From: Amphiscolops sp. MND2022
Lineage: Eukaryota
Length of the DNA: 64,000 nt
Direction of reading: 5' to 3'
Assembly (NCBI GenBank): GCA_964187785.1
Contig: OZ076410.1
Coordinates: 3,782,001-3,846,000, forward strand
Under the pieces are notes generated by a model that was given only the letters and a program-made list of their open reading frames with translations, was not told where the DNA came from and searched no databases. The first letter of the stretch is position 1. Every line of letters starts with the position of its first letter. Both the position numbers and the translations under genes were made by a program. Shown here piece after piece: positions 43,849 to 64,000 of the stretch.

Positions 43849-44329
43849 CATTACGACGCATGACCCTACACTTTTTGTGCAGCTCAAAGTTGAGCCGCTT
43901 GAGCAGTGGAATCCTGGGCCAAGCTTTAAAACATACCAACCGCAAAGAGCGAAATTCGTCGCGTGGAATTCAGGGACTAATACCGCAGTGTATAATTTCT
44001 CGCGATTTCAGTTGACGGTAAGGCAAAATTGCGGGATCAGCTCGAAATCGTGGAATCCGCTGCTTACAGCGGATTCCGGGGCAGTGACAGCGGAATCCGG
44101 ACCAGTACCAGCGGAATCCGGGGCAGTGACAGCGGATTCCGAAGACTAAGGCAAGCAAGTATTAAAATGTTTGTTTTGTGAAGCGGAATCCACTGACAGC
44201 TCTGCGTGACATCTGTTTCAAGTTGTATGACAGCGGAATCCGCAGATGAGTGCGGGCTAGTATAAAGCTTGCTGTATACATTTATTATTGCGTTTAATAG
44301 GGCGTATACAGTTTCTGGGTTTAGGATAA

Positions 44330-45035
44330 ACAAGTCTCCTTGATGTATTATAGGCCTTCATGAATCACTGTTGTCTCTGGGATTAAGATTACTGTCTCCA
44401 TTATGTATTCTACTATGTTCTCTGGGATTAAGATTACTGAGACAAATTAAAATCTGTATCATATCTCTGTATTGCTCGTAATCTACTACTGTATTTTGTG
44501 TTTAATTGGGTGTGTTTTAATCTAGTTCTATGATAAGAAACAATTTCATTGAATTCAAACTTTACTCTAACTATTTTGTACTATCTTTTTGGTGAACAAT
44601 TCTTCATCTGCACTAAATTGGCAGGTATTAATAAACGAGCATCAATGAGACAATACAACTATGAATTAAAAGCCGACTAATTAATATACATTGTCTGAAA
44701 CCTCTACAGGGTGTATTCAGTTTCTGTGTTTAAGATAATTGTGTCTCCCTGATGTATTATTGGCCTGAATGTATTCTACTAATGCCTCTTGGATTAGGAT
44801 TACTGTTTCCATTATGTATTTATTATAGGCCTACATGCTATTAATACTAAATGTATGCTACTATTGTCTCTGGGATTAGGATTACTGTCTCCATAATGTA
44901 TAATAAGCCTACATGCTATTAATACTACATGTATACAACATGTGTCTCAGGGATTGAAATTACTGTCTCCATTATGTAATATAGGCCTACATGCTACTAA
45001 AACTACATCTACTCTACTATTTTCTCTGGGATTGA
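44330..45035. repeat. Degenerate ~65-bp minisatellite inside the transposon
   Basis: Recurrent TCTCTGGGATTAAGATTACTGTCTCCATTATGTA at ~44375, 44420, 44790, 44870, 44945, 45025. Confidence 0.75.
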
Positions 45036-45152
45036 GGTAGATGGTCTTGATTCTAAACTTGATTTAATATTTGATGCTAGCATACAATATATAATACACA
45101 CAATACAAACAGTACATACATGAATATATAATCTTCTCAAAGTAACCTAAAT

Positions 45153-47228
45153 TTAGAGTCCCTCATTGTGTTTAGAGTTGACATTGAGGATTTCCCGATA
45201 TTTTTCTTCGTTCCGGAAGCGTCCTTCACACGAGTTTATCTGAACCTTAATGGTTCGGAAGAGAAAGTCTTGGGATTCAGAGAATCGGATTGCTCTGATG
45301 AGGGTGTCCAGCGACTCTTCTCCGTCTCCTGGCAAGATGTCCCACCGCTCTCCAAAGAGTGAGTCCCCCGAGCGATGGCAACCGCGAAGTCCAGCTTCAA
45401 TATGAGCAGCAAACCTGACCTAAACATTAACATGAACTCAAAAAACTATCATCTTGTATTGTTTCATTGCTCTTAGTTAACAAATACTTAATGATTTCCT
45501 TAATTGACTAATTTTGTTTTCAAATTGAGTCCAGTTTCAATATGAGCAGCAAATCTGACCTAAACAATAACATGAACTCAAAAAATGATCATCTTGAATT
45601 GTTTCATTGCTCTTAGTTAACAATTACTTAATGATCTTCTTAATTGATCAATTTAATTTTGAAATACGTACATTATCCCGCGCTGAGTCTGCTTCGAATC
45701 CAACACATCGCCTGGTGAAAGTTGTAGCGGGGCACACATTAAAACTCGCAGAATGTTTTTTTCGACAAAGGCCTATGGCCCGCTTGATGGCAGAAAATAC
45801 AGCATATGCTCGATCAATGGGGCAAACCATGCTGTCTAGACTCACGGGGTCCAATGTTGTGTAATTTTCTTCCGGGAGCCTTACTGAAGACGCTGGAATT
45901 CTGCTAGTGAAGTCCGCATTTTCATCCCATGTTAAACTGACAAATGCTTTCTTCCTTGAAATAACGTACTCCAGCATTTCAATTGTGCATGTGTATCCTC
46001 CTCGGTCTAAAGCCTTGTTCCCTTTAACAAGAATGCCGTTTGTGCACGGAGCGCAAGTCAATGGCACGCTTGTCCTGGTTTCCCCGTCCGGAAGCACGGG
46101 GATTAAATTGATCATGTCAATTTCTAAGGGCTTCTCCTTCTGAGAGCGGGGCTTTTTTGGAGCCGGCGGACGAGGAATCGAGTCGCCATCGTCGTCATCG
46201 TCGTCTTCTGCTTTCGGGACGATGGCACTAACTTGCTGGACTGGGTTCCGTAGTACGCTGTACGAAACGTATCGAGGCATTTCGCCTTCTACAGAAACCA
46301 TCATTTGATGTAGGAACGGATCATTAAGCAGTATTCGTCCATGCTTCACAACGGCAACGTCTTCCGATTCGTCTAGGAAGTCAACCTAAATAAATGAAGG
46401 AATAAATCTAAATGCAGAGATCCTTCTGCAAAAATGCCTAATTGCAGAGTATACAAATCTTACATGGACTAAATCCTAATTAGCGTAGAAATAAAAATTA
46501 GACCTAATAAATAACACTTCTCCTAATTCCAGAGGTGTACAATCTTACATGGACTAAGTCCTAATAGGTATCCCGAACACTCTTCTCCTAATCCCAGAGA
46601 AATACAATCAAACATTGTACATGTCACAATACGATGCATAACCCAACACGTTTTGAAAAGAACGGAGTCGACTACTCACAGCATTTTGGACCTACAGGAC
46701 CTGGAATCCGCTGTTTTAAATGACGGATTTCAAAAACACACTTTATAACAAGTGCAGCGGAATCCCGGGACAAATCTCTTTACATTAAGTTTTTAGTGGG
46801 TTCCGGATGCAAATCCTATTATATTAGACAGCAGCGGATTCCGCAGTCTCTATTCCGATTTTAACCGCACTGATTTTCAAAAAGTAAAAACTATTTGGAC
46901 TGACACTCACCTCGTCGTGAACACAATGCTTGGGGTTGTACTCGAGTTGTACTACCCTTGGTGTTTGTCGTCTGTCCTCTCTGGAAAGGATGGAGGAATG
47001 TGTCTTTTCTATGACTTTTCGAACGTTCCATAACGACAAATCTCTACGCTTTTCTTCTGGTACCTCTATAGTTTCTGAGAGATAAATCGAAGTGTAGCCC
47101 ATCCACTTTATTTTAACAGACCAGTCGCTAACAATGCCAATAATTTTAGCCTTTGTCCACCTAGATACACTCTCGTCAATAACGTGAACAATTTCGTTTG
47201 GGCGAAAAATTTCCGCAGGCGTAGACAT
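45153..47228 (-). CDS. Transposon gene 1: 432-aa protein with an N-terminal Tudor/Agenet-like barrel; rest unknown
   Basis: Exons 47228-46911, 46385-45672 and 45419-45153, all phase 0 with GT-AG, no stops; N-terminus EIVHVIDESVSRWTKAKIIGIVSDWSVKIKWMGY resembles Royal-family domains (W..AKI....V.IKW.GY). Confidence 0.75.
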
Positions 47229-47527
47229 ACTGGGAATATTAATCAGGTAAGAGGTAAACAAGTACAGTAAGTTTTAAAATGTATATTGCGTACAATGACT
47301 GACTACCAGTAGAAATTTTAGTAAAAGCGAGGTGCTAAACTGACACCACCCTTTGGTTAGAGACTCATCAAGACCTTCTTTGAAAAGCGTCAATTCACTT
47401 TGAAAAAGCGTCCAATTATTTGAAAAAGCGTCAAATAACACTTTAACGTGGTAATTGAGTTGAGGTGCGAACGTCTGATGTGATATTAACCTCTCCATTC
47501 TTATTTTAATTTTCATCTTCATCTCCA

Positions 47528-50500
47528 ATGGCAGGATCAAGTTACATACAAAGTTTATGGGATGAACACCTGTTGATTGTCGAATGCAATAGGCAGTTTA
47601 TCAACAGCGACATTCTAGAAAAGATATATCTTGCGGAAATAAATTCCAAGAACAGGTATCGTAATATGCTTACAGCCGTCAAACAAATTGTTACTGGTAC
47701 TTCGCTGGATCGAGATCCAGAAGCTTCGGTCAGAAGAGTCAAAACCAAAAAAGGAGGACGTGAAGCAGTCTACGTAGCTGCGAAAATAATGAAACTTATC
47801 ATAGTTTGCGGATTGAGAGATCACACATGGAACCAAGCCAGGAAAGATTTTGTCTCCTTCTTTTTCTCCCGAGAGCTCATTCCTGATGTTGACCCTTACA
47901 ATGTATCTGTCCCAAACAACGTCCCCATCAATGCGTCTATACCAAACAACGTCCCCATCAATGCGTCTGTACCAAACAACGTCCCCATCAATGGTTCTGT
48001 ACCAAACAACGTTCCCATCAATGCGTCTGTACCAAACAAGGTCCCCTTCAAAGCATCTGTCCCAAACGTCGTCCCCTTCAATGCTCCTGCCACTAACAAC
48101 TTGTGTATGCCTGTTTCATCTGGCACATCCATCAAACGGACTAACCTAATTAAGAGCAGGCCGAAACTCTCATTACGTAAAAAGGCCCAGGATGTGTGTA
48201 GAGCCGGGGAAAAATTGAACTTGAAGAGCTTTTGGAGACAAGTGATTTGGTGCATCAGGTACAAAGGGATTAGTATTCGTGGGTTGACTGAAGCAGCTCA
48301 CAGAGAAGCTGAACAAAGGAAGAGGCGTAATGGAGCCTCCAAGAAGCAAATGAACATCATAGGGGGCCTTATTACTGGACTGTTCAAGGACAGGGGTAGC
48401 TGTTCTGACTTTCGCGACGCTTTGGCAATTCATACAAAGACTGGTAACGTAAATGACGTAATCAACCTGATCCGTTCTCGATTGTCAGTTCCTGGCCTGG
48501 GCTTTAACTTGGTACCCTCAATTCGTACGGTTGTCACGTCCAATGCCAAATTCACCCAACATTTCATTAAACTCTGCAATCCGGAAAGAACCTTTAGTGG
48601 ATTCCGAGTGGATGTTGTTCGATGCGTCAAACTTGCTGCATACGTAATCCTTGAAACTACAAACATCTCGGGATTGAAGGTTGATATCTGGGGAGTTGGT
48701 GCCGCAATTGGAGGAACAGAAGTAACAAGACTGGCGTTTAGATTGATCTGTGAGGAAGTAAGTGTGCAATCATCTGACAGTGTCTTCTGTTTTGCCGCGT
48801 ACCGAGGCAAGGACAGCAGGTATGCTTTGGAGCAAAATGTGGGATATGAAAAAGTTGGGGACCAAACATCAGGGTGGCTGTTCAAGCAGACTGTTGCATT
48901 GAGAGAACTCGGCGTCAAATTGACTTATAGCGAAGACAATCCGTTCTTACTTAGGTGCGCAGCATTTATTATTGCTTCAATTTTTTGCTGAACGAAAGAA
49001 AGAAAGTCTTTTAGTCTTCTGCAACCTGATTCATGAATTCTGGATTTAAGATAGTTTTTCGTCATTGTAATGTTTTTGCTGTAATTTGAGGAGAGTTTAA
49101 CTTTTTTCTTACATTTAGGCTAATTCTTGGAATCTCAAACGATCGCAGCTCAGATTTCCCGTCACTCATGCCACTGTTTCTGGGAACGGACGACACGTTT
49201 CTACCTACAACAGTCGATCCAGAATCTGGATACCGAAGCAAAGTTACAGTTCCATTTCGCACTGATCTACCTTCAACGTCTCTCGTAAGCTACGACGACA
49301 TACGATGCGTTTGCCCTGATGTAACGCACATGATAACCAGATGTGTGGAAAATGACTTGAAAAAAATTGCGCAGAAGCTTGTTGATGACAAGCATCCTAA
49401 AGAGAAAGGGTCACTCGCGCAATTGGAAGAAAATCTGACCAAACGAGATGTGAAGAAACCGCACTTCCAGTTCGATACGACTACCAAATCTGGACAGAAA
49501 GTGAAGACTGTCGGAGCGGTATCACTTTCTGGGTCGGCAGCACTTACAGCAATTGCCAACAAAGAAGAGCTTTCTGATATGATTCCAGACATGACAAACT
49601 TATTCGAAGGCGTATGGAAAGACGAAGAAGTATTAATGGGAAGCAACGACAATGAAAACTCCGTCAAGGTGTTGAAAGAGATGTACCCGTCACTGTTTTC
49701 GAAACCAAATCCCACGAAGAAGAATGAAAACCATGGGTACATTTCTATTTCAGATGCAGCTGAGCTCTTGAGGGAAAGCCTTAACATGTGCACTATTCTT
49801 TTGCGCAGTTCACGGACCGTTCTCGACATTGCAAGTTTCGGCAAGTGGGCAGAGACGTATTACCAAGTCTCCATGTTACTTTTTGGCAAAGATAAAGGAC
49901 TTACGCCTTACAAGCTGAAGATGCTACTTTATCCACAACTAATTGAGAGCGGACATATTATAACTCCTTGGAATCATATGTGCGAGGGTTTGGAGAAGTC
50001 TAACCATAATGCAAACAAAGCATTCCAGAGCAAGACGATGAGAGGCGGAGGAAAGCAGTCAACCCAGGACCCCCTTTTTTTCGAGCTTCAATTTTCCTTG
50101 CTGAAGCTGTTCAGGAAACAATCTATTAAAGCAAAACAAGTTTCAATTAACGATTTGTTATCAAAAGCCCTAGGAGTTGTCGGCATAGCCAATCAAGCTG
50201 ACGAAGAATCGAAGACTTACAATGATATTTGCCTGCAGCCTGTTTCCTGTGCTTCGATTGCTGTCGGTGAGACACGGGACAGGAAATACCGCTTTTTGGG
50301 ATTATACTTTTTTGTAGTGGGTCACTTTGGTTCTATGAAAAATGAAGATATCCAAAATGCGATAACCGATATGAGTGGAACAGTTTGCACCAAGGCAAGT
50401 GCTGAAACATTGTTACTTTCGCACTCGACTTGTCCAAACTGCTTTGTCGTTATGATAGACGAGAAAGAGTTTGAGGAAGTCGACGGGTGTTCTCAAAGAT

Positions 50501-50880
50501 CCATCGAACGATAAAGAGTTGACGGACGTGCCGAAGAAGTCTGTATCAGAAAATACGGCAACTGCGACTGGACTTCTATGTCGCAAATTTGCTGGCGGAG
50601 ATTGGAAATTCCTTCAGTTTTCGTTTGTACTGGATTCATTAAAATCAGATCGCATCCTGGATCCGAAAAAAGTACGAAATGTTACCAGGACCAAACGTCA
50701 AGAAGTTGCAAGTTAAAGATGTGCGCCCTTTGTTAGCAAGACAGTGCAGTGAACAAGGTCAGAAAGTTTCCGCTATCTCAGCCCTGAAGAGCCACAGAAA
50801 AAAAAGAAAGATCAAAGAGGAAAAAGCAGCGGATAATGAGGAAACTATCATTTTGAACCTAATTTCGTTTGTTTCTTTCT
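47528..50880 (+). CDS. Transposon gene 2: DDE transposase, RAG1/Transib/Chapaev-like, with C-terminal BRCT-like domain; disrupted
   Basis: Exon 47528-48954, intron, exon from 49119 (in-frame join ...DNPFLLR/LILGIS...). Motifs: KVDIWG[V]GA (first Asp position is GTT at 48695-48697), TYSEDNPFL, CPDVTH, LTPYKLKML..MCEGLEKSNH (cf. RAG1 TNYFHK..SEGNESGN). BRCT-like FLGLYFFVVGHF..ITDMSGTV and WKFLQFSFVLDSLKSDRILDPKK. Frameshifts near 50490 and 50670. Confidence 0.8.
47913..48080 (+). repeat. 30-bp coding tandem repeat (VPNNVPINAS x ~5.5) in the transposase N-terminal region
   Basis: GTACCAAACAACGTCCCCATCAATGCGTCT repeated in frame. Confidence 0.9.
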
Positions 50881-50984
50881 GATAGTTGTTCTTTGTATTT
50901 TGTTCTGTTTAATTGAGTTGTTTACGTACAAACTATTGTAGTACAAAAATTAAAAATTATTGAAGGTAAAATCATGGTTTTCAT

Positions 50985-51560
50985 TTATTGTCTCCCAAAA
51001 ACGCAGTGCGGAATTTAGGGTCAAACGGTAAAACATGTACAGCGGAATCAGCAGACAAATGGTAATACATTGCGAGTTTATTTTCCTGTACCATACCTCA
51101 AGAAAATGTCCAAATCTGCTTAGTAGCATAAAACAGTGGATTCGGCGTTTATCGCGAGTGTTGCGCCCATAACAGCGGAACCCGCTGTTTTGTATTCCAG
51201 ATTGATGCCTTCCAAAATCGCAGTGCGGAATTTAGGGGCCAATGTTAATACATGTACAGCGGAATCCACAGGCAAATGTTAATACATTGCAATTTCGGTT
51301 TCCTGTACCATACCTCAAGAAAATGTCCAAATCTGCTTAGTAGCATAAAACAGTGGATTCCGCGTTTACCGCGAGTGTTGCGTCTCATAACAGCGGAATC
51401 CCCTTTTTTATGTCCCAAAATAATGTCTTCCAAAACGCAGTGCGGAATTTAGGGACGAATGTTAATACATGTACAGCGGAACCCGCAGACAAATGCTAAT
51501 ACATTGCGACTTCAGTTTCCTGTACCATACCTCAAGAAAATATCCATATCTGCTCAGCAG
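50985..51560 (+). repeat. 217-bp tandem array (~2.6 units), left arm of an inverted pair
   Basis: CATGTACAGCGGAA at 51034, 51251 and 51468 (217-bp spacing). Confidence 0.9.
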
Positions 51561-52201
51561 TTTGAAATTCATAAATTCATAACAAAATCATCAATTCTCA
51601 ATCTAATTCCCAATCTAATCTATTTTCTCAAAATAACAAAAATAAAAGAAGTTTTGCTTGTATTTGCAGTTGATCTTTAATCCCATTTCTGGTTGGGAAA
51701 AGCTGTTGGTTAATTTCTTGGATGGGAAGTACCGGGGGACCCTGAAGGCACTGGGATCTCACAGCTTGAAGAAAGCCAGCTGGACATCTCTTCGAATGTA
51801 ACTCCATACTAAAAACAATATCCCTCCGTAAGAAAAATAAATACATTCCGTTTCACCAAAAACCAAAAGGCAATATACAAAAACAAAAAGCAAAAAACGG
51901 TTTTCGTCTAGTCGAACAAAGTCACAAAGTACTATGAAAATTTGCATGAAAATTACATACTTTCTGACAAACGGTGTCAATGGAACATTGAACAGTAGGG
52001 CAACTCGTCTTCTGTACAATCATGGCAGCGTTCAACAGCTGTGCCCTCTCAAGTTTGTCCACGCATGCAGAAGAACTAAAACATACCAACCTCTGTAATT
52101 AGGAATATGATCATTTGATCGTTAATACCAACAGACTATATACAAGAATTCATGCATCATGCAAAAGTAATAATAGTAATATAATAATGTGAAATAATGA
52201 T

Positions 52202-54657
52202 CTACCTCATCAAATTCGCGATGTGTGTAAACAACAGTCGGGGGCAATGGGGGTAACACTCGTTGTAGGGGTCACACCGGTCCCTCTCATTGGAGAACTC
52301 TTCTGCTGCTTTCTTCACATGCAGGCGGTGGATAAAGTTGACTCCCAGCGCGACGGACAAGCCGAAAGTCTCCACCGCGTGGATCATCTTTGCTGAAAGA
52401 ATCAGGGCCTGTCCCTCGAAGAGAGTGACTTTTGTGCACCCGCCCATGTCAAGCTCTTCATGGGAGCCAAAAAAGAGGTCCTTTCTGAACAATCATAAAA
52501 CAGTAATAATTTTTTCCCGGTTCTTAGTTATACATGCAAAACACAGAAAAAAGTATTGTGTAGTGTAAGTATAAACAATATTACTTGCCTGGGGAGATGT
52601 TTGAATGCCTTGAACAAGTCCACGTTTCTGGCAGTGGGCCTCACAACATGGAAAACTTTAACTCCTGTAACAATAGTTGGTCAGTCACCAAACACGACTA
52701 TTTTATAACACTATTTTTATATATTGTACTAAAAACTGGTACAAACCTTTGGCAAGATAATAGAAGACGCTGGTTGATGAAAAGTCCTGATGGAACCGCG
52801 TGATCGCGCCATATTGTGAAATGAGCAAATAGTTGGATTCACGCTCTGGACGCATTTCTGCAGGGGTCTCGTCCCAGCTCATGTGCCCAACGGAAACATG
52901 GTCTAGGAAGCTGGGCTTCTTGAATGAGGCTCCTGGGCTTTTGTTTGCCTCGGCGTCGATCACGTTGTAGAACTTGGGGGGGTCACTCTCCATCATCTCG
53001 GTAACTCTGTTACCTGGCACAACTTTTTTCCCTTCCTAAATGATAAACCAGGTCAGGTTAAGGTATCCTTAAAATCAATAAAGAAAACAAAACTGATGAT
53101 TGTATCTCCACCAGCAGTTATAATCACTGTGCTCACCTCGAACTTTGTCGTTAAATAACGAAGTGTCACGGGGTTGGCACTATATTCTTGCATCATCTGT
53201 TGGACAGACGACATTCGGCTCATCTTCTCCCTTGTTAGCTTCGTCTTGAAACCGGGGATGGCCGAACCGTCATGGATGACGAAGACATATTCCCCGTCCA
53301 AAAAAGCCGGGTCTGAGAGCAGTTCCTGCGTGATTTCGTCCGCTGCAATGTCACGCCGCATCGAGGTAGCATTTGGAATCTAAATTCAACACAAATCACT
53401 TTACTCAGAAGACAAAATCTCATTCTTCAATCCAGAGACTTCAGTCTAGAGAAGAGATCTTATTCTTGAATCCAGAGATTTAGATATAGAGATATCTTAT
53501 TCTTGAATCCAGAGACTCAAATCTATTTAGATCTAGAGTCTGAAGAAGAGATCCCGTTCTTAAATCCTGAGAAGAGATCCCATTCTTAAATCCAGAGAAG
53601 TTCTTACTTGACTCATAAGGTCACGTAGCTCCCAGATGCTACCGAACGATTTCATGTGGTGCGTATCCGTGATGTTCAACCTTCGCAAGGTTAGCGTGCA
53701 TCTGCTCAGCTTTGGCATCTGCAATGGCCTTCGCGATACACATTCGCCGTCGTTTCTGTTCCCACATTTCCTTAAGCAATATCACTATTAGGTGTTTTAA
53801 TCCCACCAAATCATTATGATTTTAAAACTAGAAATCCATAGAAATTACACATGCTGAAAAATAATACTTGAAACATGAAACAAACATTAATAAAAATACA
53901 TACACTTTTGGGCTCTTCCACTTGAATGTGATTGACTTTTGCAACGTTGAAGGCTTCCAAAACTACAATGGAAGCGATTGCCTGTTCTTCTTTCGTCTCC
54001 TCAAGAAAGACAGGTGACTCTTCCGCAGTAGCTTCTTCCGCCTCTGTTGCAAAGTGAAGGGTGGAAGAGGAGGAAACAACACCAGCATGCTCAGGCTCCA
54101 CAGGACTGCTGCTTTCCGGAACCTGTTCAAGGATAAATCATTTTAACTCAAAAATGTAAATCAAAAACTAGGACTTGATTCTTATTCATGCACAAAAACA
54201 ACGTTTATAATGGATGATTTTAATATGTTTGGATGAATTACCTCCCACCACGGTGTTGATGTCGATGTCGCACTGGCTTCTCGTTTAATCGCCTTGGATG
54301 GTGGCGGTTGCTCGAAGAACTTCCTCGTCCTCCCTTCTGCCGAGAAGGCCTTCTTGCACCCCGGGTATGTGTCTCTTACGAGAACAAAGTTTTCTCGTGT
54401 GGGCTCGAGTAATTTTGCTCGATCTTCCGCTGTCAGGGCATTTCGAGCATTCCAGCATCGGAGTGTCAGCACATGATCAGCAGTCTGCTGCACGTCCTTG
54501 AAAAAGGAGCCATCTGTAGGCGAGCCACAAAACATGCACTTCATTCTTGTGCCGCGCGTCTGCTCTCTCTTACCGCAACTCTGATTGATGTGCCGGGTCA
54601 GATTACCCTTATTTGAGAGGGTCAGTTGGCACGTGGGGCATTGAAATTGGGGCATAT
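52202..54657 (-). CDS. Transposon gene 3: C2H2 zinc finger + JmjC histone demethylase (KDM2/KDM7-like); one probable frameshift
   Basis: Exons approx. 54657-54241, 54122-~53910, ~53785-53609, then 53379-53137, 53035-52747, 52664-52589 (GC donor), 52484-52202. FQCPTCQLTLSNKGNLTRHINQSC; JmjC YLLISQYGAITRFHQDFSSTSVFYYLAKGVKVFHVVRPT..CTKVTLFEGQALILSAKMIHAVETFGLSVALGVNFIH retains the T, H-x-D, K and H ligands. Confidence 0.87.
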
Positions 54658-55329
54658 TTTCAGAGAGAACCTTCAAACATAAAAATTTTTAGGCCTAATA
54701 CGATTTCCTACATTCATGGTCATAATTGCAGAGGTTGGAAAATAGCATTTGATCTTAGGTTTCAAGAGATTACAGATACTTTTCCTAATTCCAGAGGTAA
54801 GCATCAGTCTTACGTGTTGCGCGTACTGATACTTTTCCTACTTCCCGAGATATGCATCAGTCGTACATGCAATCGTGACAATGCACAAGTTAGTACGGCA
54901 TATGTTGCAATCGCAAAAGTGTAACGGAAACTGTTACTGAAGCAGCGTTACGTGATTTTTACTTTAATCGATTTGATCTCACTGCACCAACTGCGCCCCG
55001 CCTTAGCATACTGTTATCTCGTTAGATGAAAATTTTAAACTCTAAATGACATTTCTCTGGGTTTCGGAATGAGCGACTGCTCCCAAGTACCCTGTGACGA
55101 CTCCCAAGCCACCTTGGAGGAACCGATCACAAAAGCTTCAGTAGACGATTCTAGGCACTTTTATATGCGCTTATAAGACAATTACAGACATATAGACACT
55201 GATAGACTCTTATAGATTCTACTTGACTTCTAGTTAATTAGGATTTCAACCTGGGAAATTTGAGATTACTGGTCCCAAAATGCATTTTCAAGAGAGGGTT
55301 TGAAAAAACTAAAATTCTTGAACACAGTT

Positions 55330-56126
55330 TCATGATCCTGAGCAGATTTGAATATTTTCTTGAGGTATGGTACAGGAAATTGAAATCGCAATGTATTAAC
55401 AATTGCCTGTGGATTCCGCTGTACATGTATTACCATTGGCCCCTAAATTCCGCACTGCTATTTTGGAAGGCATCAATCTGGAATACAAAACAGCGGGTTC
55501 CGCTGTTATGAGGCGCAACACTCTCGCTAACCACGGAATCCACTGTTTTATGCTACTAAGCATATTGAATATTTTCTTGAGGTATGGTACAGGAAACCGA
55601 AATTGCAATGTATTAACATTTGCCTGTGGATTCCGCTGTACATGTATTACCATTAGCCCCTAAATTCCGCACTGCTATTTTGGAAGGCATCAATCTGGAA
55701 TACAAAACAGCGGGTTCCGCTGTTATGAGGCGCAACACTCTCGCTAACCACGGAATCCACTGTTTTATGCTACTAAGCATATTCAATAATTTCTTGAGGT
55801 ATGGTACAGGAAATTGAAATCGCAATGTATTAACATTTGCCTGTGGATTCCGCTGTACATGTATTACCATTGGCCCCTAAATTCCGCACTGCTATTTTGG
55901 AAGGCATCAATCTGGAATACAAAACAGCGGGTTCCGCTGTTATGAGGCGCAACACTCTCGCTAACCACGGAATCCACTGTTTTATGCTACTAAGAATATT
56001 GAATATTTTCTTGAGGTATGGTACAGGAAACCGAAATTGCAATGTATTAACATTTGCCTGTGGATTCCGCTGTACATGTATTAACATTTGTCCTTAATTT
56101 CCGCACTGGTTCTTTGGGAGGCAATA
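55330..56126 (-). repeat. 217-bp tandem array (~3.6 units), inverted relative to 50985-51560
   Basis: Repeated ORF starts at 55396/55613/55830 show the 217-bp period; the sequence is the reverse complement of the 51-kb units. Confidence 0.9.
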
Positions 56127-56693
56127 ATATGGAGTATGAAACAGTTTGTTGTTATAAGGAAAAAATCGTTTGGTGCTTCATGTTGTTCTAGATTGTGTAA
56201 CATAGATTGTATATTATTATTATAGATAGGGTTTTATCATGCCGTAAGTGTCAGCCGGCCAATCCGAGATACATGTGTTTTACACACTCATCTTTCAAGT
56301 TCTGATGAAAACTTGGGCATTCTTTCGGGCCAATGAACGAACAATGAGAACGAGTGCTGATGATTCAAGTCAAATGGTAGATGAGGTGTGGTTTTAACAC
56401 TTCCACATGATTAAGAACCGCATCAGGCGCTGCCAAAAATTATAATATAAATAATTATAAAATTATACTCATTATAATTATATAACTACAATTATTTCCA
56501 TTGGCAGCGTCTGATGAGGCTTTTATTAATTTGTCAAAGTGGAAGTGTTAAATTACTATGATGGCAATCATCAGTTAAGTAATTAGCAGTTTCAGTAGAG
56601 TAATATCACAATACTATTCATTATATAATTTTGATCTACTAGGAATCAGTCAATTTGAATTGTACATCGTTCTATTTGTCGAAGGAACCTACA

Positions 56694-59600
56694 ATGTCTC
56701 TGCAAACGCATCAAATTCAATCACAACCATTAGAAGATCTTGGAAATTTGACAGAACTTCAATCGCCTCAACTAGTTACCTCAACGCCAGTGCAACCCGA
56801 GACGTTTACACTTACACTGCCTCATCCTCCAGTTCCAACATTAACCCCTCTCTCACGATCGCATGAATATTTGACAACCCCCACCGGAAAGAGCCCGGCT
56901 GCAGTTCGCCAATACTCACACCCGTCATATTTTGAATGGAATCAATCGCAATGGCTCAACATGGATGGAATATCGCACGAAATTCCCCCGACCATGTTTG
57001 GTGAAATGCTTCCACCACCTGAACATTCGCCGGACCTTTTTCTTCCTCCGCTTGAAGCTTCGTCGACTGAGCAACTTGAAGAAAGTCGTAAAAGAGCAGC
57101 TAGCTCTGCAACAAATGATATTCCGGAGGTCAGTTTTTGACTTTCAATTGAAAATTTCAAACTGAAGCGGGAGATTTTAACCTTTTAGAACCACATAGAG
57201 CACGAAAAGAGTTTCATTCATCATAGCAGCGGAATCCGCTGTCTCATGTTTCATATCATTGACTTACAAAAGAGCATTGCGGAATTTAGGGGCTAAGGTT
57301 AACACATGTACAGCGGGATCGGCAGACAAATCCTAATACATTATGATTTTAATTTCCTGCACCATACTCCAGGAAAATTTCCAGCTACCGCCTTGGCTGA
57401 GCCGTGACGGATTTTTTTCAGCTTTCACTTTCAAGAAAAGACGGAACGTGTCACACACCTCGCAGTGTTTGCACGATGGTATAAAATAAGCGAAAATTTC
57501 GAGGAGAAACTTCATATTTCCTAGATTTTAAAATTCATTTTGCGTTTGAATTTGAAAACCAATTTGCATTTGAACTTAATGAGTTTTATTTGACTTTCAT
57601 TATAATATTTGAAGTTGTTTTTGAAATTTGTACTCAAATTATTTAGAAAATATCGAAGACTTCTATCAGGGCTACTTGTGGCGAGACGACTGAAGAAGAA
57701 CTTGAGATAGCCATCAGGGACATTGTAGAGCAGTACAAGAAAACGGAAGCGCTGACACAAAAGCAAAGAACAATGCTCTTTCGTGCTTTGGCGTGTTTCC
57801 TGTCAAAGCATGCAGCACCACCAATGATGGACAAATGTATCACAGAGCTGACAGTGCATGCTGTTACACAGGCCATCGTTTCCTTGCAAGAGGACACAGA
57901 CGATGAAACAGCAGTTGATGCAGGAATCACAATCTATGTTGAGCCTGCTGAATTTTCTCCGATAAGATCGTCGCACACTGTTCCCCGATGGCTAGTGGAC
58001 GGTTTGAAAACATACTACCTGGAGGCAAGACCGCACTTCCTGCCAAAAGAAGGTCTTGATGTTTTCACCAGGGTTTTCGTAGATGACACAAGAACAGTGA
58101 GAACTCACCGCTTTTTCGTCAATTCCAATGGCTCAACCCATTTCAAAGTGCGCCAACTATGCGACCAATTCAAAGACACGGTAAAAACTTAAATTTCAAC
58201 CCAGAAACACCTAAATTGCTTCAAATGTTTCCAGGGCCACCACGCGTTTTACATTTATTTCAAATTCATGGAAAATTTAATTGCGAGACCGATTTGATTT
58301 ATTGAATCTACGCCACGAATTTTTTCGCAGTTAATCATGCATGTTTTCAATGTTTTTACCGAAGTTTGCGTCTTTTAGCTTCAGCAGCACATCGATAACC
58401 CTCAAGAGACCACCCTAGAGAGACATGTTGCGAGTTTTCTTCCGTTTCGAAGCGATCCAGGTTTCACCATTGGCAAACAGAAGCAAGTAATCAATCAGGT
58501 TTTGTTCTTTTTCGTTTGATAATAAAATATTGATTTTCCTTTCTAAACCTTTGTTTTCAACAAAGGAATGGAAATTCTTTTTTAGGTAAAAAGTCAGACA
58601 GAAAATTATACCCACAAAGAAGTTTCCAAGGCGGTGAAGCACAGACTTGACCAATTACGGTACCATCGGCAAACAATTAGAGCGCAACATTGGATCAAGA
58701 ACAATGGATGGTTACTGTCAAACTGCAGTGATTTGGAGCAGCGCCTGAACACCTTTTATGCGAGGATGGGCTGGGACAAATGCGACATCAAGAAAACGAT
58801 GACTATAGCTATAAAACAGGTTAGGTTGGGTTACGTCACGTTCGAGTACTTTAGATTGCAGTGCATTAGATTACGATAAAATTTCCCAATGGCACAAATC
58901 GAAAATCAAATGGGGCAAAAAAATCATTTGTTTTGGTACCATAGGGTAAGCAGCTAAAGGAGTGTTTGGCCTGTCTAGAGCTGCCCCATGCTAAGTGATC
59001 CATAGTTATTAGAAAAAATCATTGAGTTTGGATGCTTTGTGTTTTGAATAGATGAAGAGCACATCATCACGGACCAGTATATGCAGGCCGCAGTTCAATT
59101 CCATTATCTGCAAAGGAGACAGGTTGTCATACGAAAACCAGATAAGTTTGAAAGACCGAATTGACAACCAAAAGTGGGAGTGGATTTGCGATGCCCATTT
59201 CACCAAATTTGGTCGAGGCATTGTCAGTCTAGGAAAACTGGAGAAAGACACAATAATTGTAGACTACCACGGGAAAGTCATTACCGGCCAGAAGTTCGAG
59301 GAGTACGTGCAGCAACCCGACGTTACGAGCGAATTTGTAATGGAAGTAGCAGGTCCACCAAAGCGACTTATAGATGCCAGTTCCGAGATTTGTGTGCATC
59401 ATCCAACGAATTTATGTAATAATAATATTAATGATGTTTAATCTTTAGAGTTGTAAGAATAACAATCTCTACAATTTCTTTATGTTGTTTAGGTATGGGT
59501 CGTTTAGCCAACCACGCGACCCAGAGAAGAAACAACGCTGATAACAGAGAAGCCAACATGAAGTCTGCTAGCATCCTCTTGGACCATACAGATCCCCCTC

Positions 59601-59701
59601 TGAGAGTCGCAGTAATGAAGGCTAGACGACAGATAGAACCCTTCGAGCAACTACGTTTCGATTACGGCGATAAGACAGCCCAAGAACTTTTTACCGAATA
59701 A
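56694..59701 (+). CDS. Transposon gene 4: 631-aa protein with a C-terminal PR-Set7/KMT5A-like SET domain; apparently intact
   Basis: Exons 56694-57128, 57647-58180, 58379-58498, 58586-58819, 59052-59415, 59493-59701 give 1896 nt in frame with GT-AG boundaries; SET motifs KFGRGIVS..IIVDYHG..IDAS..MGRLANH..ARRQIEPFEQLRFDYGD. Confidence 0.9.
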
Positions 59702-60593
59702 CTCTGCTTGTAGAACTGCCATTTTATACATTCTATTTTGGATCTTTCAGTAACCTAGTCAAGTGTTCGTTCAGCTAAAACCTACTCGTTTTAATTTCTG
59801 TTTTGAGTTAAATATAGAGATACAAATAATTATCCTAAATACAGAGATTCCCTTAAATGAGCCCGGCCCTGTTCTGAATACAGAGATATATATCGTATAC
59901 GGAGACTAAATCTTGTCCCATGGTATTTTAAATCTTATCCTTAATACATAGGCAAATATATATCTTAATTACAGAGATTCCCCTAAATGAGCCCGGTCTA
60001 GTTATAAATGCAGATACCGTATATTTCGGCGAATGAGCCCCCCTCCGTATACTATACGGAGGGCTTTGCAAGCCCCCTCCCCAATTTTGAAAAAGAAGTT
60101 TTTGATATATGGTATGTTCGTCATATATCAAGAAAAATAAAAGAAAATAAAAGTTCAATAAGTGTAAATTGAATGAATTTTCTTGGTATAAATTCAATTT
60201 TCAATTCTACTAAAATCGGAGTTTCATTTCATTACTAAAATCTGTCATTTCAAGCTCTGAAATTTCTTCAAAAAGAAAAAATAAAAAAGGGGTTTATTTG
60301 CCGGAATATACGGTATATTTATATATTATATATTATTTATATTTATATATTTTTATCTTATACATTGATTCCCTCAAATAATCCTGACAAATATGTTGAA
60401 GAGTATAAATGTTACTTACCTTGATTTAGAATCAAAACTTTTTGAAGACTAAATAGGAAGAATATGTAAGAGGTAAGAAGACTTCGAGAATTCTTCAGCT
60501 AAGACTTGCTTATCAATTGTGAATCTTCAAATGAGAGGTATTCAGTAGAAGCAGGCTGGTCAACTTGTTTTAGCAGTAACTAATCACACACTG

Positions 60594-60875
60594 ACAAAAC
60601 GGTTTGTTTATTTTACTCTGTAATCGAACAATTCCAGTCACGTGACCAATGCATCGTTCTCTCAAACACAGAGAAGAGTGAGATTGGCGCCAGCCCGCTT
60701 ATGACGGTCGGCGCGTTGCTATAGTTACCGACACAAAACGGTTTGTTTATGTTACTCTGTAATCGAACAATTTCAGTCACGTGACCAATGCATCGTTCTC
60801 TCAAACACAGAGAAGAGTGAGATTGGCGCTAGCTCGTTTATGACGGTCGGCGCGTTGCTATAGTTACCGACACAC
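60594..60875. repeat. ~142-bp tandem duplication in the right part of the transposon
   Basis: Two near-identical units AAAACGGTTTGTTTA...CAGTCACGTGACCAATGCATCG...GACGGTCGGCGCGTTGCTATAGTTACCGACACA. Confidence 0.9.
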
Positions 60876-62243
60876 TAATTTAGCACAAATTATGAAGTTA
60901 ATATTGATGACTGTGATTAATTCTCTCTGAAACTCTAAAATCTTCAAATACAATTAACACTCATGATTATCAAAACGAATTAGCTGACCGATAAATTTAA
61001 TTAATACCACAACAAGGAATAATTCCTTTTTTCAACATTTTTTTAAAACCTTTACTTAATTTATGACAATCAATTTTAGATATAGTGTCAAGTATTTCCA
61101 CTGTCCTCATTATTGAACAATGTTATTTTCAGACAATGTTTGTTTTATTCGTCAAACTGGTAAAAAAAAGTCTTGAGCTGTCAAAACTTCTGACCTAATG
61201 ACTTCTGAAGTTAATATTGATGACATTCTTACAAATCAATACAAACAGTGCATTCTCTTAAACACAGAAGAGTGGTAAATTGTTTTACAAAGTTCGGACA
61301 AAATGCAATTTTGACAACTGAATTTTGACTAAAATTGGCTCTTTTCTTCGTTCATAATATAAGCATACAGAATCTTAATTACAACACATTTGACACAATC
61401 TAATTGTTACAAAAATTTAGCACAAATGATGAAGTAATGATAACATTCTTACAAATCAATACTATAATTAATATAACTAAATATTAATTTACAAGTTCTT
61501 CAAATCACTAGATCAATTGACATATGCTGAACCAGGTTCGCATAGTTTTGAATGCGTTTGATATGCAGATTGAACAATTTGACTAAAATTGATTCAACTA
61601 AAAATTATTAAGTTTGAAATACCTAATTAATTAAAACATTTAAATAGGCCAAATCCAAATTATGAGTGTCATTCATTGAAGTGTCCTTGTTGTGTGCTGA
61701 TGGGTGATGAACCAGAAGGAATACAAATGGTCCTAAACATAAATGTTGTAAGTGCTGATTAAACAAGGTACGGTACATATTTCGCGATATCTTGTAGTGG
61801 AATCCACTGTTAAAAACAGCAGCTGTCAAAAACTGCGGAATTCGCTTGCACAACAGCGGAATCCACTGGTGCTGTTGCGGAATCCGCTGTCGCAGCAGTG
61901 GATTCCACTGTTTTTTCCTCTACATTACGAAAGCTTGTCCTTGGAATCCGCTGTTTTTACGCTGTGTAATATTATGTGACCCCGGATTCCGGTACAGCGA
62001 CTGCGGAATCCACTGCTGTTTAATATAATAATATATGCCTCTGAATTCCACCAAAAATTCAAGGTAAAGAGATTTGTCCCCGGAATCCAGAAAAAATTGC
62101 AAGCGGAATCCGCTGCACATGTTATAAAGTGTGTCTTTGAAATCCGTCATTTTAAACAGCGGATTCCAGGTCTGATAGGTGCTACCTGCGGTTAGCAGTC
62201 AATTCCGCAGTTTTCAAAAAGTGTAGGGATATGCGTCGTAATG

Positions 62244-64000
62244 TTTTAGATTCTTTCAGAAGCGTTTCATTTGCTTAGCTATAGTGCGGCAGTTTGCATT
62301 TCGGCCTTGTAGAGTAGGAAACGAATCTCGCGCGTAACATCCTCGGAACTCGAAGTTGAATCTTGCGTCTTTGTTGATCAGCTCTGTTAGCTGCGTGTTG
62401 TCAACCATTGTATATATTGGAGGTTTTGATATCCTCTCAGTTGCGATCAATGAGAACGATAGATCTTCTCTCATCTAAAGAAAAAGACGAAACGGCTTTG
62501 ATGTGGCTTTGGAGAATTTCAACTCGAGACCCAGTGCGCTCGGGAGGAATTGTATTGTCCTCGATGTGTTAGTCAGCAGTTAATTTGAAAACCAGACAGA
62601 ATTGATCACCAAAGTTGTCGAGAGTGGTGCCATTACCACCATGTTTTATTCTCTCCAGAAAGCCCAGCATAGAGTCTAAAGGCTATTTTCCTAATGAAAC
62701 ATGCGAGAAGAATGTTGCAGCTGATACTCCTGGTATATAGAACAATTTCGAACCCGAAAAATTTATCTTTTCCATTTTGTGAAAAAATATAACAAACAAA
62801 AGCTTTCAGTACAAAAATAAATAATACAGAATTGAATGATGGTAAAAAAAGAAAATCAATTTGGGACGGAAAGGGTAGGAGCGACTATTGCAGACTCGAC
62901 TAAAATTACGGTCCGAGCAGCAGATAGTTTTGAAATGGCGCAGCGCTTGAGTCAACTCCATTGGTGAAAAACCCGAGCTGACCTGGCTCAATTTCGGGAA
63001 TTCGAGTCGGAGGCTGTATGCGCCTTTCGCCTCCGGAATTTCGTTTTCCCGGCGCGAACCGAGTAATTCTGCAGCTCCTTGCACACCTCAGAGCTCGTCT
63101 TTTTATTACTTTTATCTTTAATGACTTCAACAATGATTCCTCCGATAAGGAAGCTCTGCTCGATGATGCCTCTATTTCGCTGGTTCTCAGGAAGCTGGTG
63201 CTTGCGACAGACCTCGTCCATCCCAGCTGCCCTCGAGAACAACTTTTCCTCGCTATCCATTCAGGGGACAAACTGCTGCTGAAGTCCTGATACCAACTTC
63301 CCCTGCACCTCCTCCAGAGTGAGGATTCGTTTCCTCGTTATTGGTGTTGTCTGTGCACTGGACGAACCCGCAGACGACGGAGAAGACTGCCACCTCCGTT
63401 TCTCCACCTTCTGGAGAGGTTGGCGATGAGAACGGTTCGAAGGTTAACTCTTCGTCAGAAGTGGAATCGGATTCGGGCACAGGAATCCCCGTGCGCGAAG
63501 CATCGCCTAGCAGCGTTTTAAAACAATCCAGCACACTTGGTACCTGCTGGAACTGGCTTGGCGTCAAGACCAAACGCGACGCCGACCTCCTAAGGTTCAT
63601 CAGAGCCGGTCTGATACTTTCAGGCAACTGAAACAAAAATGAAGCGAATGAAGTTTTGTCTTTATTAGGTTGACAATAACATGAATAAGCATTATTAAAA
63701 GTAGTCAGATTGCACAATTTTGATATTTACGTTAATTATTCATGCTTTGTTTGAAAACTTATAAATTGGCATAAAATTACACTGCGAAAAGTCGACATTA
63801 AATCTACGAATACTCCAAAGCACAAGTTGGAAAACTCGAATTTGAAATACTTTCGCGTTCGAAAGTGGCTAATTTGATTTATTTAAAGTAAAAGTGTGCC
63901 ACAATTACACTATATGCAACAGAATAGACTAATGTATGTGGACGTGAAGTATTTTTTGCGAAATATTTGTCGAAAAACTGTTCCTGAGGTTTTGAATTGA
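62244..64000. repeat. Right flank (block Y with MCP/protease relic) plus copy C (Z+X) of the triplicated segment, running off the window
   Basis: 62244-62645 matches 25321-25745; 62648-64000 matches 42257-43600. Confidence 0.9.

What the first reader, a model, noticed from the sequence alone, without database searches (positions are those of the whole stretch)
52202..54657. Zinc-finger/JmjC demethylase fusion inside a transposon, with a GC-AG intron
Seen: the JmjC Fe(II)/2-OG ligands (T, HQD, K, IHAV) are all present; one clear and one atypical C2H2-like finger lie at the N-terminus. The intron between exons 52664-52589 and 52484-52202 uses a GCAAGT donor and restores the frame (HLPR/KDLFF). 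One extra G near 53645 (GTTCGGTAGC) would separate the ZnF and JmjC frames. Established: KDM2/KDM7 enzymes act on H3K36, H3K9, H3K27 or H4K20 methyl marks and normally carry CXXC or PHD domains. Inference: C2H2 fingers could target demethylation to the element's own repeats.
Basis: partly seen in the sequence, partly recalled or inferred. Interest (0 to 1): 0.72.

Follow-up and report, generated by a model that had tools for sequence, protein, structure and literature searches.

The report
Transposon-borne zinc-finger JmjC gene
This stretch is a frameshifted copy of a gene that joins zinc fingers to a histone-demethylase-type (JmjC) domain. Every copy examined lies inside the same large cut-and-paste transposon, and selection has kept the gene intact in other copies, so the element may edit the chromatin that would silence it.

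Summary
A minus-strand, multi-exon gene encodes a zinc-finger exon, two linker exons and a KDM2/KDM7-like JmjC core. The T, HxD, Y, K and second-His positions are all present. The 52664-52589 / 52484-52202 junction uses a GC-AG intron, found in 40 of 45 genomic copies and in two other assemblies.

Two details are wrong. The frame break is not an extra G at 53645. It is an 8-bp deletion between 53745 and 53744, private to this copy among the 45. The CDS also probably continues past the TAG at 52202 into two more exons (52075-51961, 51808-51710).

The gene sits inside an 18.4-kb element (43849-62243). Thirteen of 45 copies are open through exons 1-8, all in a sister subfamily. Three lineages give dN/dS of about 0.2, and exon indels between the lineages compared are all multiples of three. 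A distant element in another assembly keeps the transposase, zinc-finger and JmjC genes together.

The fusion-in-a-transposon reading is therefore supported. Targeting of the element's own repeats is untested. No RNA data were available, and I found no paper describing a transposon-encoded JmjC gene. The scan had already noted this family on other DNA of this genome.

The parts
43849..62243 (.). Host element: an 18.4-kb DNA transposon with about 30-bp terminal inverted repeats that start CATTACGACGCAT
   Evidence: Homology with deletion derivatives stops exactly at 43849 (L024) and 62243 (L019). The ends were read, and the inverted repeat pair is I24.
54242..54655 (-). Exon 1: ATG plus 138 codons with two C2HC-type zinc fingers and a conserved GCKKAFS block. 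It is as tightly constrained as the JmjC exons.
   Evidence: Pfam zf-C2H2 E 2e-4, below the curated cut-off. The exon profile hits classical C2H2 fingers in the PDB. dN/dS is 0.12-0.25. A 39%-identical homologue lies upstream of the JmjC gene in L057.
53904..54122 (-). Exon 2: acidic, Ser-rich linker of 73 codons, phase 0 at both ends
   Evidence: AG/GT sites are conserved. In-frame 9-nt and 18-nt length variants occur between lineages. dN/dS is 0.5-1.0.
53608..53770 (-). Exon 3: linker, 171 nt in the other copies and 163 nt here. An 8-bp deletion between 53745 and 53744 shifts the frame and brings the TAG at 53641-53639 into frame.
   Evidence: Alignment of 13 copies. The 45-copy table shows -8 in the window alone. 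Majority read contigs carry 8 extra letters at 53742-53744 (table 4).
53137..53379 (-). Exon 4: 81 codons, the N-terminal part of the catalytic core region
   Evidence: It aligns with residues 184-219 of the intronless homologue P0029, upstream of that protein's JmjC core in one ORF. The score was 66; none of 300 shuffles exceeded 49. dN/dS is 0.10-0.26.
52747..53035 (-). Exon 5: first half of the JmjC barrel with T79, H82 (52792-52790), D84 (52786-52784) and Y92
   Evidence: PDB hits to KDM2A and PHF8, with FHQDF aligned on FHVDF. dN/dS is 0.09-0.22.
52589..52664 (-). Exon 6: 76 nt carrying the 2-oxoglutarate Lys (GVKVF), followed by the GC donor AG|GCAAGT
   Evidence: GC donor in 40 of 45 copies and in L060 and L061. 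The product is collinear with P0010 and P0004.
52485..52588 (-). Intron 6, of the GC-AG class
   Evidence: The alternative GT-AG model is excluded by subfamily B.
52206..52484 (-). Exon 7: second half of the JmjC barrel with the distal His (MIHAV, 52381-52379). It ends at a phase-2 donor AG|GTAGAT that overlaps the TAG at 52204-52202.
   Evidence: PHF8 hit with IHAV on IHAV. 47% identity to P0010. Lineages B and C read GTAC at the donor, so they have no stop there. L058 has a CA|GTGAGT donor at the same place and phase.
51961..52075 (-). Probable exon 8: 38 codons plus a split codon
   Evidence: It is an island of 85-97% identity between subfamilies, set in poorly conserved sequence, with conserved AG and GT sites. 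It is open in all 13 intact copies. It is 79% identical in amino acids in the 76%-identical lineage C, with dN/dS 0.36-0.40.
51710..51808 (-). Probable exon 9: 32 codons and a TAA stop
   Evidence: The frame stays open from exon 8 in all 8 subfamily-A copies that cover the exon. Subfamily B has an in-frame 6-nt indel and a stop at nearly the same place.
50985..51567 (+). 217-bp repeat array (2.6 units) just beyond the 3' end of the gene. The units carry GCGGAATCC.
55323..56144 (-). 217-bp repeat array (3.7 units), inverted relative to the first, about 670 bp upstream of the ATG

Best explanation
Shown. The interval is one copy of an accessory gene of an 18.4-kb cut-and-paste transposon. The gene has seven clear exons, and probably nine. 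It encodes one polypeptide of about 565-635 residues: two C2HC-type zinc fingers, an acidic linker, and a KDM2/KDM7 (PHF8)-like JmjC Fe(II)/2-oxoglutarate oxygenase core with every metal and cofactor ligand in place. The window's copy is disabled by a private 8-bp deletion in linker exon 3. Thirteen sister copies are open throughout.

Inferred. The protein is an active lysine demethylase that serves the element. The zinc-finger module brings it to chromatin, possibly to the element's own GCGGAATCC-bearing repeat arrays. There it would remove repressive methyl marks such as H3K9me1/2, H3K27me2 or H4K20me1, by analogy with KDM7 and PHF8. That would keep the transposase and passenger genes transcribable and the ends accessible. 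It would be an animal counterpart of the plant VANC anti-silencing factors and the fungal transposon-borne TET/JBP enzymes.
For: JmjC class. Exons hit only KDM2A, KDM7, PHF8 and PHF2 chains, with the ligands aligned. The intronless homologue P0010 hits ceKDM7A at 2.7e-22, PHF8 at 6.6e-22 and KDM2A at 6e-18, and reaches the Pfam JmjC cut-off.

One ORF. 13 of 45 copies are open over exons 1-8 with conserved splice sites. Between lineages A, B and C the only exon indels are multiples of three. The exon order is collinear with the intronless homologues P0029, P0010 and P0004.

Selection. dN/dS is 0.18-0.23 overall, 0.09-0.22 in JmjC exons 5 and 7 and 0.12-0.25 in the finger exon. dS is 0.3-0.5 and intron K is 0.21-0.33.

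Part of the element. Copies share transposase-side and SET-side flanks, and the termini are defined by deletion derivatives. The finger exon occurs in the genome only beside this JmjC gene. A roughly 50%-identical element in another assembly (L057) keeps the transposase, finger and JmjC genes together.

Motif. All 18 GCGGAATCC sites in the window lie inside the element, at both subterminal regions and in the arrays flanking the gene. Chance expectation is 0.26.
Against: There is no transcript evidence. No RNA run holds the sequence, and the runs I laid are DNA contigs. There is no biochemical evidence.

Single exons do not reach Pfam's JmjC threshold, and the joined model was not searched.

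The protein has no PHD or CXXC reader domain and no recognisable JHD helical domain.

Only one finger resembles a DNA-binding C2H2 finger, and its last ligand is Cys. The AlphaFold model of exon 1 was useless (pLDDT 44).

The repeated 9-mer may be the transposase's binding site rather than the finger's. Some JmjC proteins are hydroxylases or are inactive despite intact ligands. The copy in this window cannot make the full protein.
Confidence: 0.55

Rival explanations
1. The JmjC enzyme serves the element, but not by demethylating histones at the element itself. It could hydroxylate or demethylate a non-histone protein such as the transposase, a repair factor or a silencing factor. It could also prepare target-site chromatin for integration.
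For: The same selection and linkage evidence applies. The family lacks the histone-reading PHD or CXXC modules of KDM2/KDM7. No JHD domain was detected in the exon or homologue Pfam scans. JmjC enzymes that are hydroxylases exist (general knowledge).
Against: All PDB matches at the thresholds used are lysine demethylases of the KDM2/KDM7 group; none is a hydroxylase such as FIH or JMJD6. By earlier first-reader notes that I did not test, the element also carries a SET gene, which points to histone lysine methylation as the shared theme.
Confidence: 0.2
2. The zinc-finger and JmjC parts are made as separate proteins, from an internal promoter or start codon or by alternative splicing. The long ORF would then be only one of several products, or none.
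For: There are no RNA data. Linker exon 2 evolves almost neutrally in sequence, with dN/dS 0.5-1.0. The first four exon junctions are all phase 0, so exon skipping is frame-neutral. In-frame ATGs exist in exons 3 and 4.
Against: The frame is preserved through both linkers in three lineages, with only 3n indels. Exon 3 has dN/dS 0.25-0.37. The finger-then-JmjC order is also kept in the distant L057 element and in distant families of this genome.
Confidence: 0.12
3. The gene is a neutral passenger: a captured host gene fragment with no function for the element, as in Pack-MULE-type captures. It looks intact only because the copies are young.
For: Many copies are decayed. None of the 12 window-like subfamily-A copies is intact. 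Deletion derivatives lacking other genes still spread.
Against: dN/dS is about 0.2 between lineages that differ by dS 0.3-0.5. Exon indels are 3n only. Splice sites, including the rare GC donor, are conserved. The gene is retained in an element whose proteins are only 39-59% identical. No host paralogue of the finger exon was found.
Confidence: 0.04
4. It is a host gene, the KDM2/KDM7 orthologue or a domesticated derivative, that merely lies among repeats.
For: It belongs to the KDM2/KDM7 sequence group.
Against: At least 45 copies exist, and the 12 examined over 10 kb show element-wide flanking homology. E5 exon matches to KDM2A and PHF8 are weak. The gene has neither a PHD nor a CXXC domain.
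Confidence: 0.02

Closest known systems
KDM7 / PHF8 / PHF2 and KDM2 (JHDM1) JmjC histone lysine demethylases
   Same: The catalytic core is of the same group. These are the only families matched in the PDB. The T, HxD, Y, K and distal His positions align.
   Different: The match is remote: the E5 exon alignments to KDM2A and PHF8 are weak. There is no PHD or CXXC reader and no detectable JHD domain. The N-terminus carries C2HC fingers instead. The gene is multicopy and encoded inside a transposon, so it is not a host orthologue.
VANC anti-silencing proteins of Arabidopsis VANDAL (MuDR) transposons (PMC5735166, PMC10398659)
   Same: A transposon-encoded accessory protein proposed to act on the element's own non-coding repeats to undo epigenetic silencing. 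In both cases the element carries short repeated motifs.
   Different: I know of no homology between VANC and JmjC, and VANC has no known enzymatic domain (my own knowledge). VANC's effect is shown experimentally. Here both binding and activity are only inferred.
TET/JBP dioxygenase genes carried by fungal DNA transposons (PMC12730594)
   Same: An Fe(II)/2-oxoglutarate dioxygenase that erases a methyl mark, carried as a passenger of DNA transposons in several lineages.
   Different: The superfamily branch and the substrate differ: 5mC in DNA versus, presumably, methyl-lysine. The host kingdom differs and the finger fusion is absent.
SET histone methyltransferase genes in HarbingerS and MuDR transposons of oomycetes (cited in PMC12730594)
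   Same: A histone-methylation enzyme gene incorporated into DNA transposons. By first-reader note s1-151925, this element also carries a SET gene.
   Different: Those are writers, not erasers. I found no report of a writer and an eraser together in one element.

Membership tests
JmjC domain (Pfam PF02373), cupin Fe(II)/2OG oxygenases | HxD/E...H iron triad | tested here: met
   FHQDF (H at 52792-52790, D at 52786-52784) aligns on FHVDF of KDM2A. MIHAV (H at 52381-52379) aligns on IHAV of PHF8. The triad is kept in the intact copies.
JmjC domain (Pfam PF02373), cupin Fe(II)/2OG oxygenases | 2-oxoglutarate contacts (Thr before the HxD, Tyr, and Lys on the next strand) | tested here: met
   AITRFH, VFYY and GVKVF align with YTDFH, VWYH and GxKxF of KDM2A and PHF8 (alignment; for E6 through P0010).
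JmjC domain (Pfam PF02373), cupin Fe(II)/2OG oxygenases | Score at or above Pfam's gathering cut-off | tested here: inconclusive
Single exons give no Pfam hit. The homologues P0010, P0043 and P0045 score 24.4, 25.4 and 31.7 against a cut-off of 24.
JmjC domain (Pfam PF02373), cupin Fe(II)/2OG oxygenases | Double-stranded beta-helix fold | not tested
   No fold prediction of the catalytic part was made, because it would need the joined model.
KDM2/KDM7 (JHDM1, PHF2, PHF8) subfamily | Closest sequence relatives are KDM2 and KDM7 enzymes | tested here: met
   All PDB hits for E5, E7 and P0010 are KDM2A, KDM7, PHF8 or PHF2. The nearest Atlas cluster carries JmjC plus JHD.
KDM2/KDM7 (JHDM1, PHF2, PHF8) subfamily | PHD or CXXC chromatin/DNA reader domain | tested here: not met
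   The Pfam scans of all exons show neither. The N-terminal module is a pair of C2HC fingers.
KDM2/KDM7 (JHDM1, PHF2, PHF8) subfamily | JHD helical domain after the barrel | tested here: inconclusive
   No Pfam JHD hit. Exons 8 and 9 show no detectable similarity to the tail of P0010.
KDM2/KDM7 (JHDM1, PHF2, PHF8) subfamily | Host orthologue at low copy number | tested here: not met
   At least 45 copies of this family inside a repeated element, and more than 1000 candidate JmjC-like places in the genome.
KDM2/KDM7 (JHDM1, PHF2, PHF8) subfamily | Methyl-lysine demethylase activity | not testable with these tools
   This needs an enzyme assay.
Classical C2H2 zinc finger (PF00096) | CX2-4CX12HX3-5H with the hydrophobic core | tested here: not met
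   Finger 1 is CX2CX12HX4C and finger 2 is CX2CX17HX5C, so the last ligand is Cys in both. Pfam gives 22.1 bits against a 25.2 cut-off. The resemblance is real, since the profile hits Aart, CTCF and ZBTB17 fingers, but strict membership fails.
Transposon accessory gene (anti-silencing type, as VANC) | Encoded within the element in many copies and lineages | tested here: met
Transposon accessory gene (anti-silencing type, as VANC) | Purifying selection on the protein along element lineages | tested here: met
   dN/dS 0.18-0.23, with only 3n indels in exons.
Transposon accessory gene (anti-silencing type, as VANC) | Sequence-specific binding to the element's own repeats and loss of silencing marks | not testable with these tools
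   Only the element-specific motif distribution is shown.
GC-AG introns | Donor GC in an AG|GCAAGT context with a normal AG acceptor, conserved, and a frame-correct product | tested here: met
   Confirmation from RNA was not possible.

The most novel reading that the evidence does not exclude
The element carries a self-addressed chromatin kit. The finger module of the JmjC protein would recognise the GCGGAATCC-bearing arrays that bracket its own gene and the element's subterminal regions. The enzyme would erase the host's repressive lysine methylation there. Together with the neighbouring SET gene it would form a transposon-encoded writer/eraser pair. This would be the first animal equivalent of plant VANC anti-silencing, acting directly on histones.
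Probability: 0.2. Interest if true: 0.85.

Novelty: new variant of a known kind. Interest (0 to 1): 0.7.

Why it matters
Few transposon-encoded counter-silencing factors are known: VANC in plants, TET/JBP in fungal transposons, and SET genes in oomycete transposons. Six full-text searches found no paper describing a transposon-encoded JmjC gene. A recent paper on transposon-encoded TET/JBP enzymes names VANC, SET genes and TET/JBP as such factors, but no JmjC gene (PMC12730594).

Here an animal-type genome holds dozens of copies of a DNA transposon that has kept a finger-JmjC fusion under purifying selection across diverged lineages and in other assemblies. If the enzyme is active, it gives a directly testable case of a mobile element rewriting histone marks for its own benefit. 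It would also be a natural example of a DNA-targeted demethylase. Intact copies exist, so expression, demethylase assays and binding-site mapping are straightforward.

Tried and rejected
- **RNA evidence.** The look-up of sequencing runs returned only four runs from one study, none on record as RNA. Laid on the stretch, they behave as DNA contigs that cover the introns and show no splice joints.
- **Pfam on single exons.** No JmjC hit.
- **AlphaFold2 on exon 1.** With a 7-row alignment the mean pLDDT was 43.9, which is unusable. I did not run a fold search.
- **Protein Atlas on exon 1.** Only leads below 0.9.
- **Transposase ORFs against the PDB and Pfam.** No RAG1 or other transposase hit by phmmer, only a faint BRCT. 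I therefore did not confirm the superfamily that earlier notes name.
- **Searches for annotated full-length homologues.** The all-library HMMER search with exon 5 gave only 45 hits, mostly unnamed ORF fragments. The search for homologous proteins with P0029 gave 4 unnamed hits.
- **P0045 and P0050.** These long JmjC proteins show no similarity to the finger exon.
- **Exons 8 and 9 against the tail of P0010.** No similarity.
- **Further DNA from the genome.** The distant finger-JmjC families could not be inspected. The DNA of P0029's contig was also unavailable.
- **Rejected readings.** The 'extra G at 53645'. A programmed +1 frameshift at CGG-TAG, which I considered before I found the 8-bp deletion. 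A GT-AG alternative to the GC-AG intron.
- **Restraint.** Exons were joined in a script only to count their total length.
Full report
**What is there**

On the minus strand between 54655 and 52202 lies a split gene. I mapped its exons by aligning 44 other genomic copies and checking every junction.

| Exon | Coordinates | Content |
|---|---|---|
| E1 | 54655-54242 | ATG, 138 codons, zinc fingers |
| E2 | 54122-53904 | acidic linker |
| E3 | 53770-53608 | linker, broken in this copy |
| E4 | 53379-53137 | N-terminal part of the catalytic core region |
| E5 | 53035-52747 | first half of the JmjC barrel |
| E6 | 52664-52589 | 2-oxoglutarate Lys, GC donor |
| E7 | 52484-52206/52202 | second half of the JmjC barrel |

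The ATG is 2 nt inside the stated end.

**The JmjC part**

No single exon reaches Pfam's JmjC threshold. Against solved structures, E5 matches KDM2A (E 1.7e-4), the C. elegans KDM7 homologue, PHF8, KDM7 and PHF2. E7 matches PHF8 (E 3.8e-3) and KDM2A. No other family matched at E up to 1.

The alignments put FHQDF on FHVDF and MIHAV on WIHAV. The Thr, Tyr and Lys that hold 2-oxoglutarate are also present. All these residues are kept in the intact copies.

An all-library HMMER search with E5 found only 45 relatives, mostly unnamed ORF fragments. Three of them, P0010, P0004 and P0029, carry the core in one uninterrupted ORF.
- P0010 reaches the Pfam JmjC cut-off (24.4 against 24).
- P0010 hits ceKDM7A at 2.7e-22, PHF8 at 6.6e-22 and KDM2A at 6e-18.
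- Its nearest Atlas cluster is JmjC plus JHD.

The catalytic core therefore belongs to the KDM2/KDM7 group, as a remote branch.

**The zinc fingers**

E1 holds CX2CX12HX4C followed by CX2CX17HX5C. Both fingers end in Cys.
- Pfam zf-C2H2 is sub-threshold (22.1 against 25.2 bits).
- A profile of the exon finds classical DNA-binding fingers (Aart, a consensus finger, ZBTB17, CTCF) for residues 4-30.
- A 39%-identical homologue in another assembly keeps three of the four ligands of finger 1, all four of finger 2, and a GCKKAFS block. The first Cys of finger 1 lies upstream of the readable frame in that copy.
- The AlphaFold model was too poor to use.

"One clear, one atypical finger" is a fair description. 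Strict C2H2 membership fails.

**The GC-AG intron**

The donor AG|GCAAGT is present in 40 of 45 genomic copies. The rest are mutated or deleted, and none has GT. It is also present in two independent public assemblies, L060 and L061.

Splicing it gives ...HLPR/KDLFF.... This is exactly collinear with the intronless P0010 and P0004, and within one residue of P0029.

I noticed that a canonical GT-AG intron shifted 4 nt downstream would also keep the frame in the window. Subfamily B, which holds all the intact copies, reads AAGG before the exon, so that acceptor does not exist there. The GC-AG reading stands. RNA proof is lacking.

**The frame break**

That string has the same length in the 12 other copies inspected there.

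The real lesion is about 100 nt upstream. The window lacks 8 bp between 53745 and 53744, with two adjacent substitutions, and the other 44 copies all have them. With the 8 bp present, E3 is 171 nt and reads straight through from the E2 junction to the donor at 53608. The TAG at 53641-53639 is out of frame in every other copy.

The contigs of four DNA runs also carry 8 extra letters at 53742-53744 (table 4). Those contigs reflect the many-copy majority, so they cannot confirm or deny the deletion in this one copy.

**The 3' end**

In subfamily B and in lineage C the TAG at 52204-52202 is TAC (B) or is likewise not a stop (C). The TAG overlaps a phase-2 donor, AG|GTAGAT.

Downstream there are two islands of conservation with AG and GT sites and an open frame: 52075-51961 and 51808-51710, the latter ending in TAA.
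- The first island is open in all 13 intact copies.
- It is 79% identical in amino acids in a lineage that is only 76% identical in DNA, with dN/dS 0.36-0.40.
- The distant homologue in L058 has a perfect CA|GTGAGT donor at the same position and phase, followed by a weakly similar exon (shuffle p about 0.02).

I take exons 8 and 9 as probable, at about 75%. The gene would then end at 51710, about 140 bp from the 217-bp array.

**Is it one gene, and is it selected?**

Thirteen of 45 copies are open over all exons with correct splice sites. All 13 are in subfamily B, which is about 84% identical to the window. None of the 12 window-like subfamily-A copies is intact, and the window itself has a single lesion.

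In the copies compared between lineages (window, L021 and the B group, L061), exon length differences are all multiples of three: 15 nt in E1, 9 nt in E2, and 3, 18 and 12 nt in lineage C.

| Comparison | Overall dN/dS | dS | Intron K |
|---|---|---|---|
| Window (subfamily A) vs B copies | 0.18-0.23 | 0.29-0.34 | 0.21-0.22 |
| A or B vs C | 0.22-0.23 | 0.45-0.48 | 0.33 |

| Exon | dN/dS range |
|---|---|
| E5 | 0.09-0.22 |
| E7 | 0.12-0.15 |
| E4 | 0.10-0.26 |
| E1 | 0.12-0.25 |
| E3 | 0.25-0.37 |
| E2 | 0.5-1.0 |

Post-insertion decay pushes such values towards 1, so this is conservative evidence for purifying selection on both the finger part and the enzyme part. It also shows that the frame is preserved through the linkers.

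**Context**

Copies share the transposase-side and downstream flanks over 10 kb. Homology with two deletion derivatives stops exactly at 43849 and 62243, where about 30-bp inverted termini lie.

The finger exon occurs in the genome only next to this JmjC gene. Three distant hits (35-37% identity) were also found. Two of them lie about 1.2 kb upstream of distant JmjC hits.

L057 comes from another public assembly and has no DNA match in this genome. It carries a transposase that is 48-59% identical, then a finger exon, an E4-like ORF and the JmjC core, here on the same strand as the transposase.

L061 is a third lineage from yet another assembly. It has the gene convergent with the transposase, as in the window.

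The 9-mer GCGGAATCC occurs 18 times in the window, always inside the element. It lies in both subterminal regions and in the inverted 217-bp arrays that bracket the gene. Chance expectation is 0.26.

**Interpretation**

Shown: this is a broken copy of a conserved, selected transposon accessory gene. The gene encodes a finger-JmjC fusion of the KDM2/KDM7 group with a complete ligand set.

Inferred: it is an active demethylase used by the element against heterochromatic silencing. The aiming of the fingers at the element's repeats is a hypothesis. The same motif could equally be the transposase's binding site.

The main rivals are a non-histone or non-self target, and separate finger and JmjC products. 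A neutral passenger and a host orthologue are effectively excluded.

**Novelty**

Six full-text searches found no description of a transposon-encoded JmjC gene. A 2025 paper on transposon-encoded TET/JBP enzymes names VANC, SET genes and TET/JBP as such factors, and no JmjC gene (PMC12730594).

Earlier notes of this scan report the same element family, and other JmjC-bearing elements, elsewhere in this genome. They agree with what I tested. I did not rely on them.

**Limits**

No RNA data exist in the served runs. The organism is not identified here. The genome is about 1.07 Gb, with contigs of up to about 104 Mb.

Noticed in passing
window 50985-51567 and 55323-56144: Two arrays of a 217-bp unit in inverted orientation bracket the finger-JmjC transcription unit almost exactly. 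A weaker third copy lies at 57208-57383. Each unit carries GCGGAATCC. They could be regulatory, insulating or protein-binding arrays, or the ends of an older nested cassette.
   Followed up: partly
window 46626-46857 vs 61990-62244: The right terminal ~240 bp of the element is repeated internally in inverted orientation (81-83% complementary). This gives a possible second 'left end' 2.8 kb inside the true left end at 43849. The element may be composite, or it may use alternative ends.
   Followed up: no
G000, many places, e.g. C1521:218775-219038, C2:32796991-32797254, C1:26460100-26460363: Hundreds of further JmjC-like matches (32-46% identity to E5) lie in long intronless ORFs of 200-530 aa, often as identical repeated copies. 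Other mobile-element families in this genome therefore also carry JmjC genes. Earlier scan notes ascribe some of them to BEL/Pao retrotransposons.
   Followed up: no
window 31001-40000: GC content (0.440-0.450) and GC skew are nearly constant over 9 kb, which suggests a long tandem or satellite-like array.
   Followed up: no
window 28000-30379 (+): Two overlapping ORFs both hit reverse transcriptase (RVT_1). This looks like a retroelement pol gene split by a frameshift.
   Followed up: no
window 53417-53600 (intron 3): Short tandem repeats (37-bp and 26-bp units) fill intron 3. Read contigs show length variants there.
   Followed up: no
L021 and L023 (subfamily B copies), downstream of exon 8: A duplication of about 270 bp repeats the 3' half of exon 8 and the start of the next intron. 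L022 lacks it.
   Followed up: partly
L058:1-114 and 10421-10702: The distant homologue's JmjC 3' end appears twice, about 10.6 kb apart, on one contig of another assembly. This suggests tandem or neighbouring element copies.
   Followed up: no
window 47528-50514 (+): The two large transposase-side ORFs have no Pfam or PDB transposase match by simple sequence search, only a faint BRCT-like tail. They are 48-59% identical to ORFs next to the JmjC gene in L057.
   Followed up: partly
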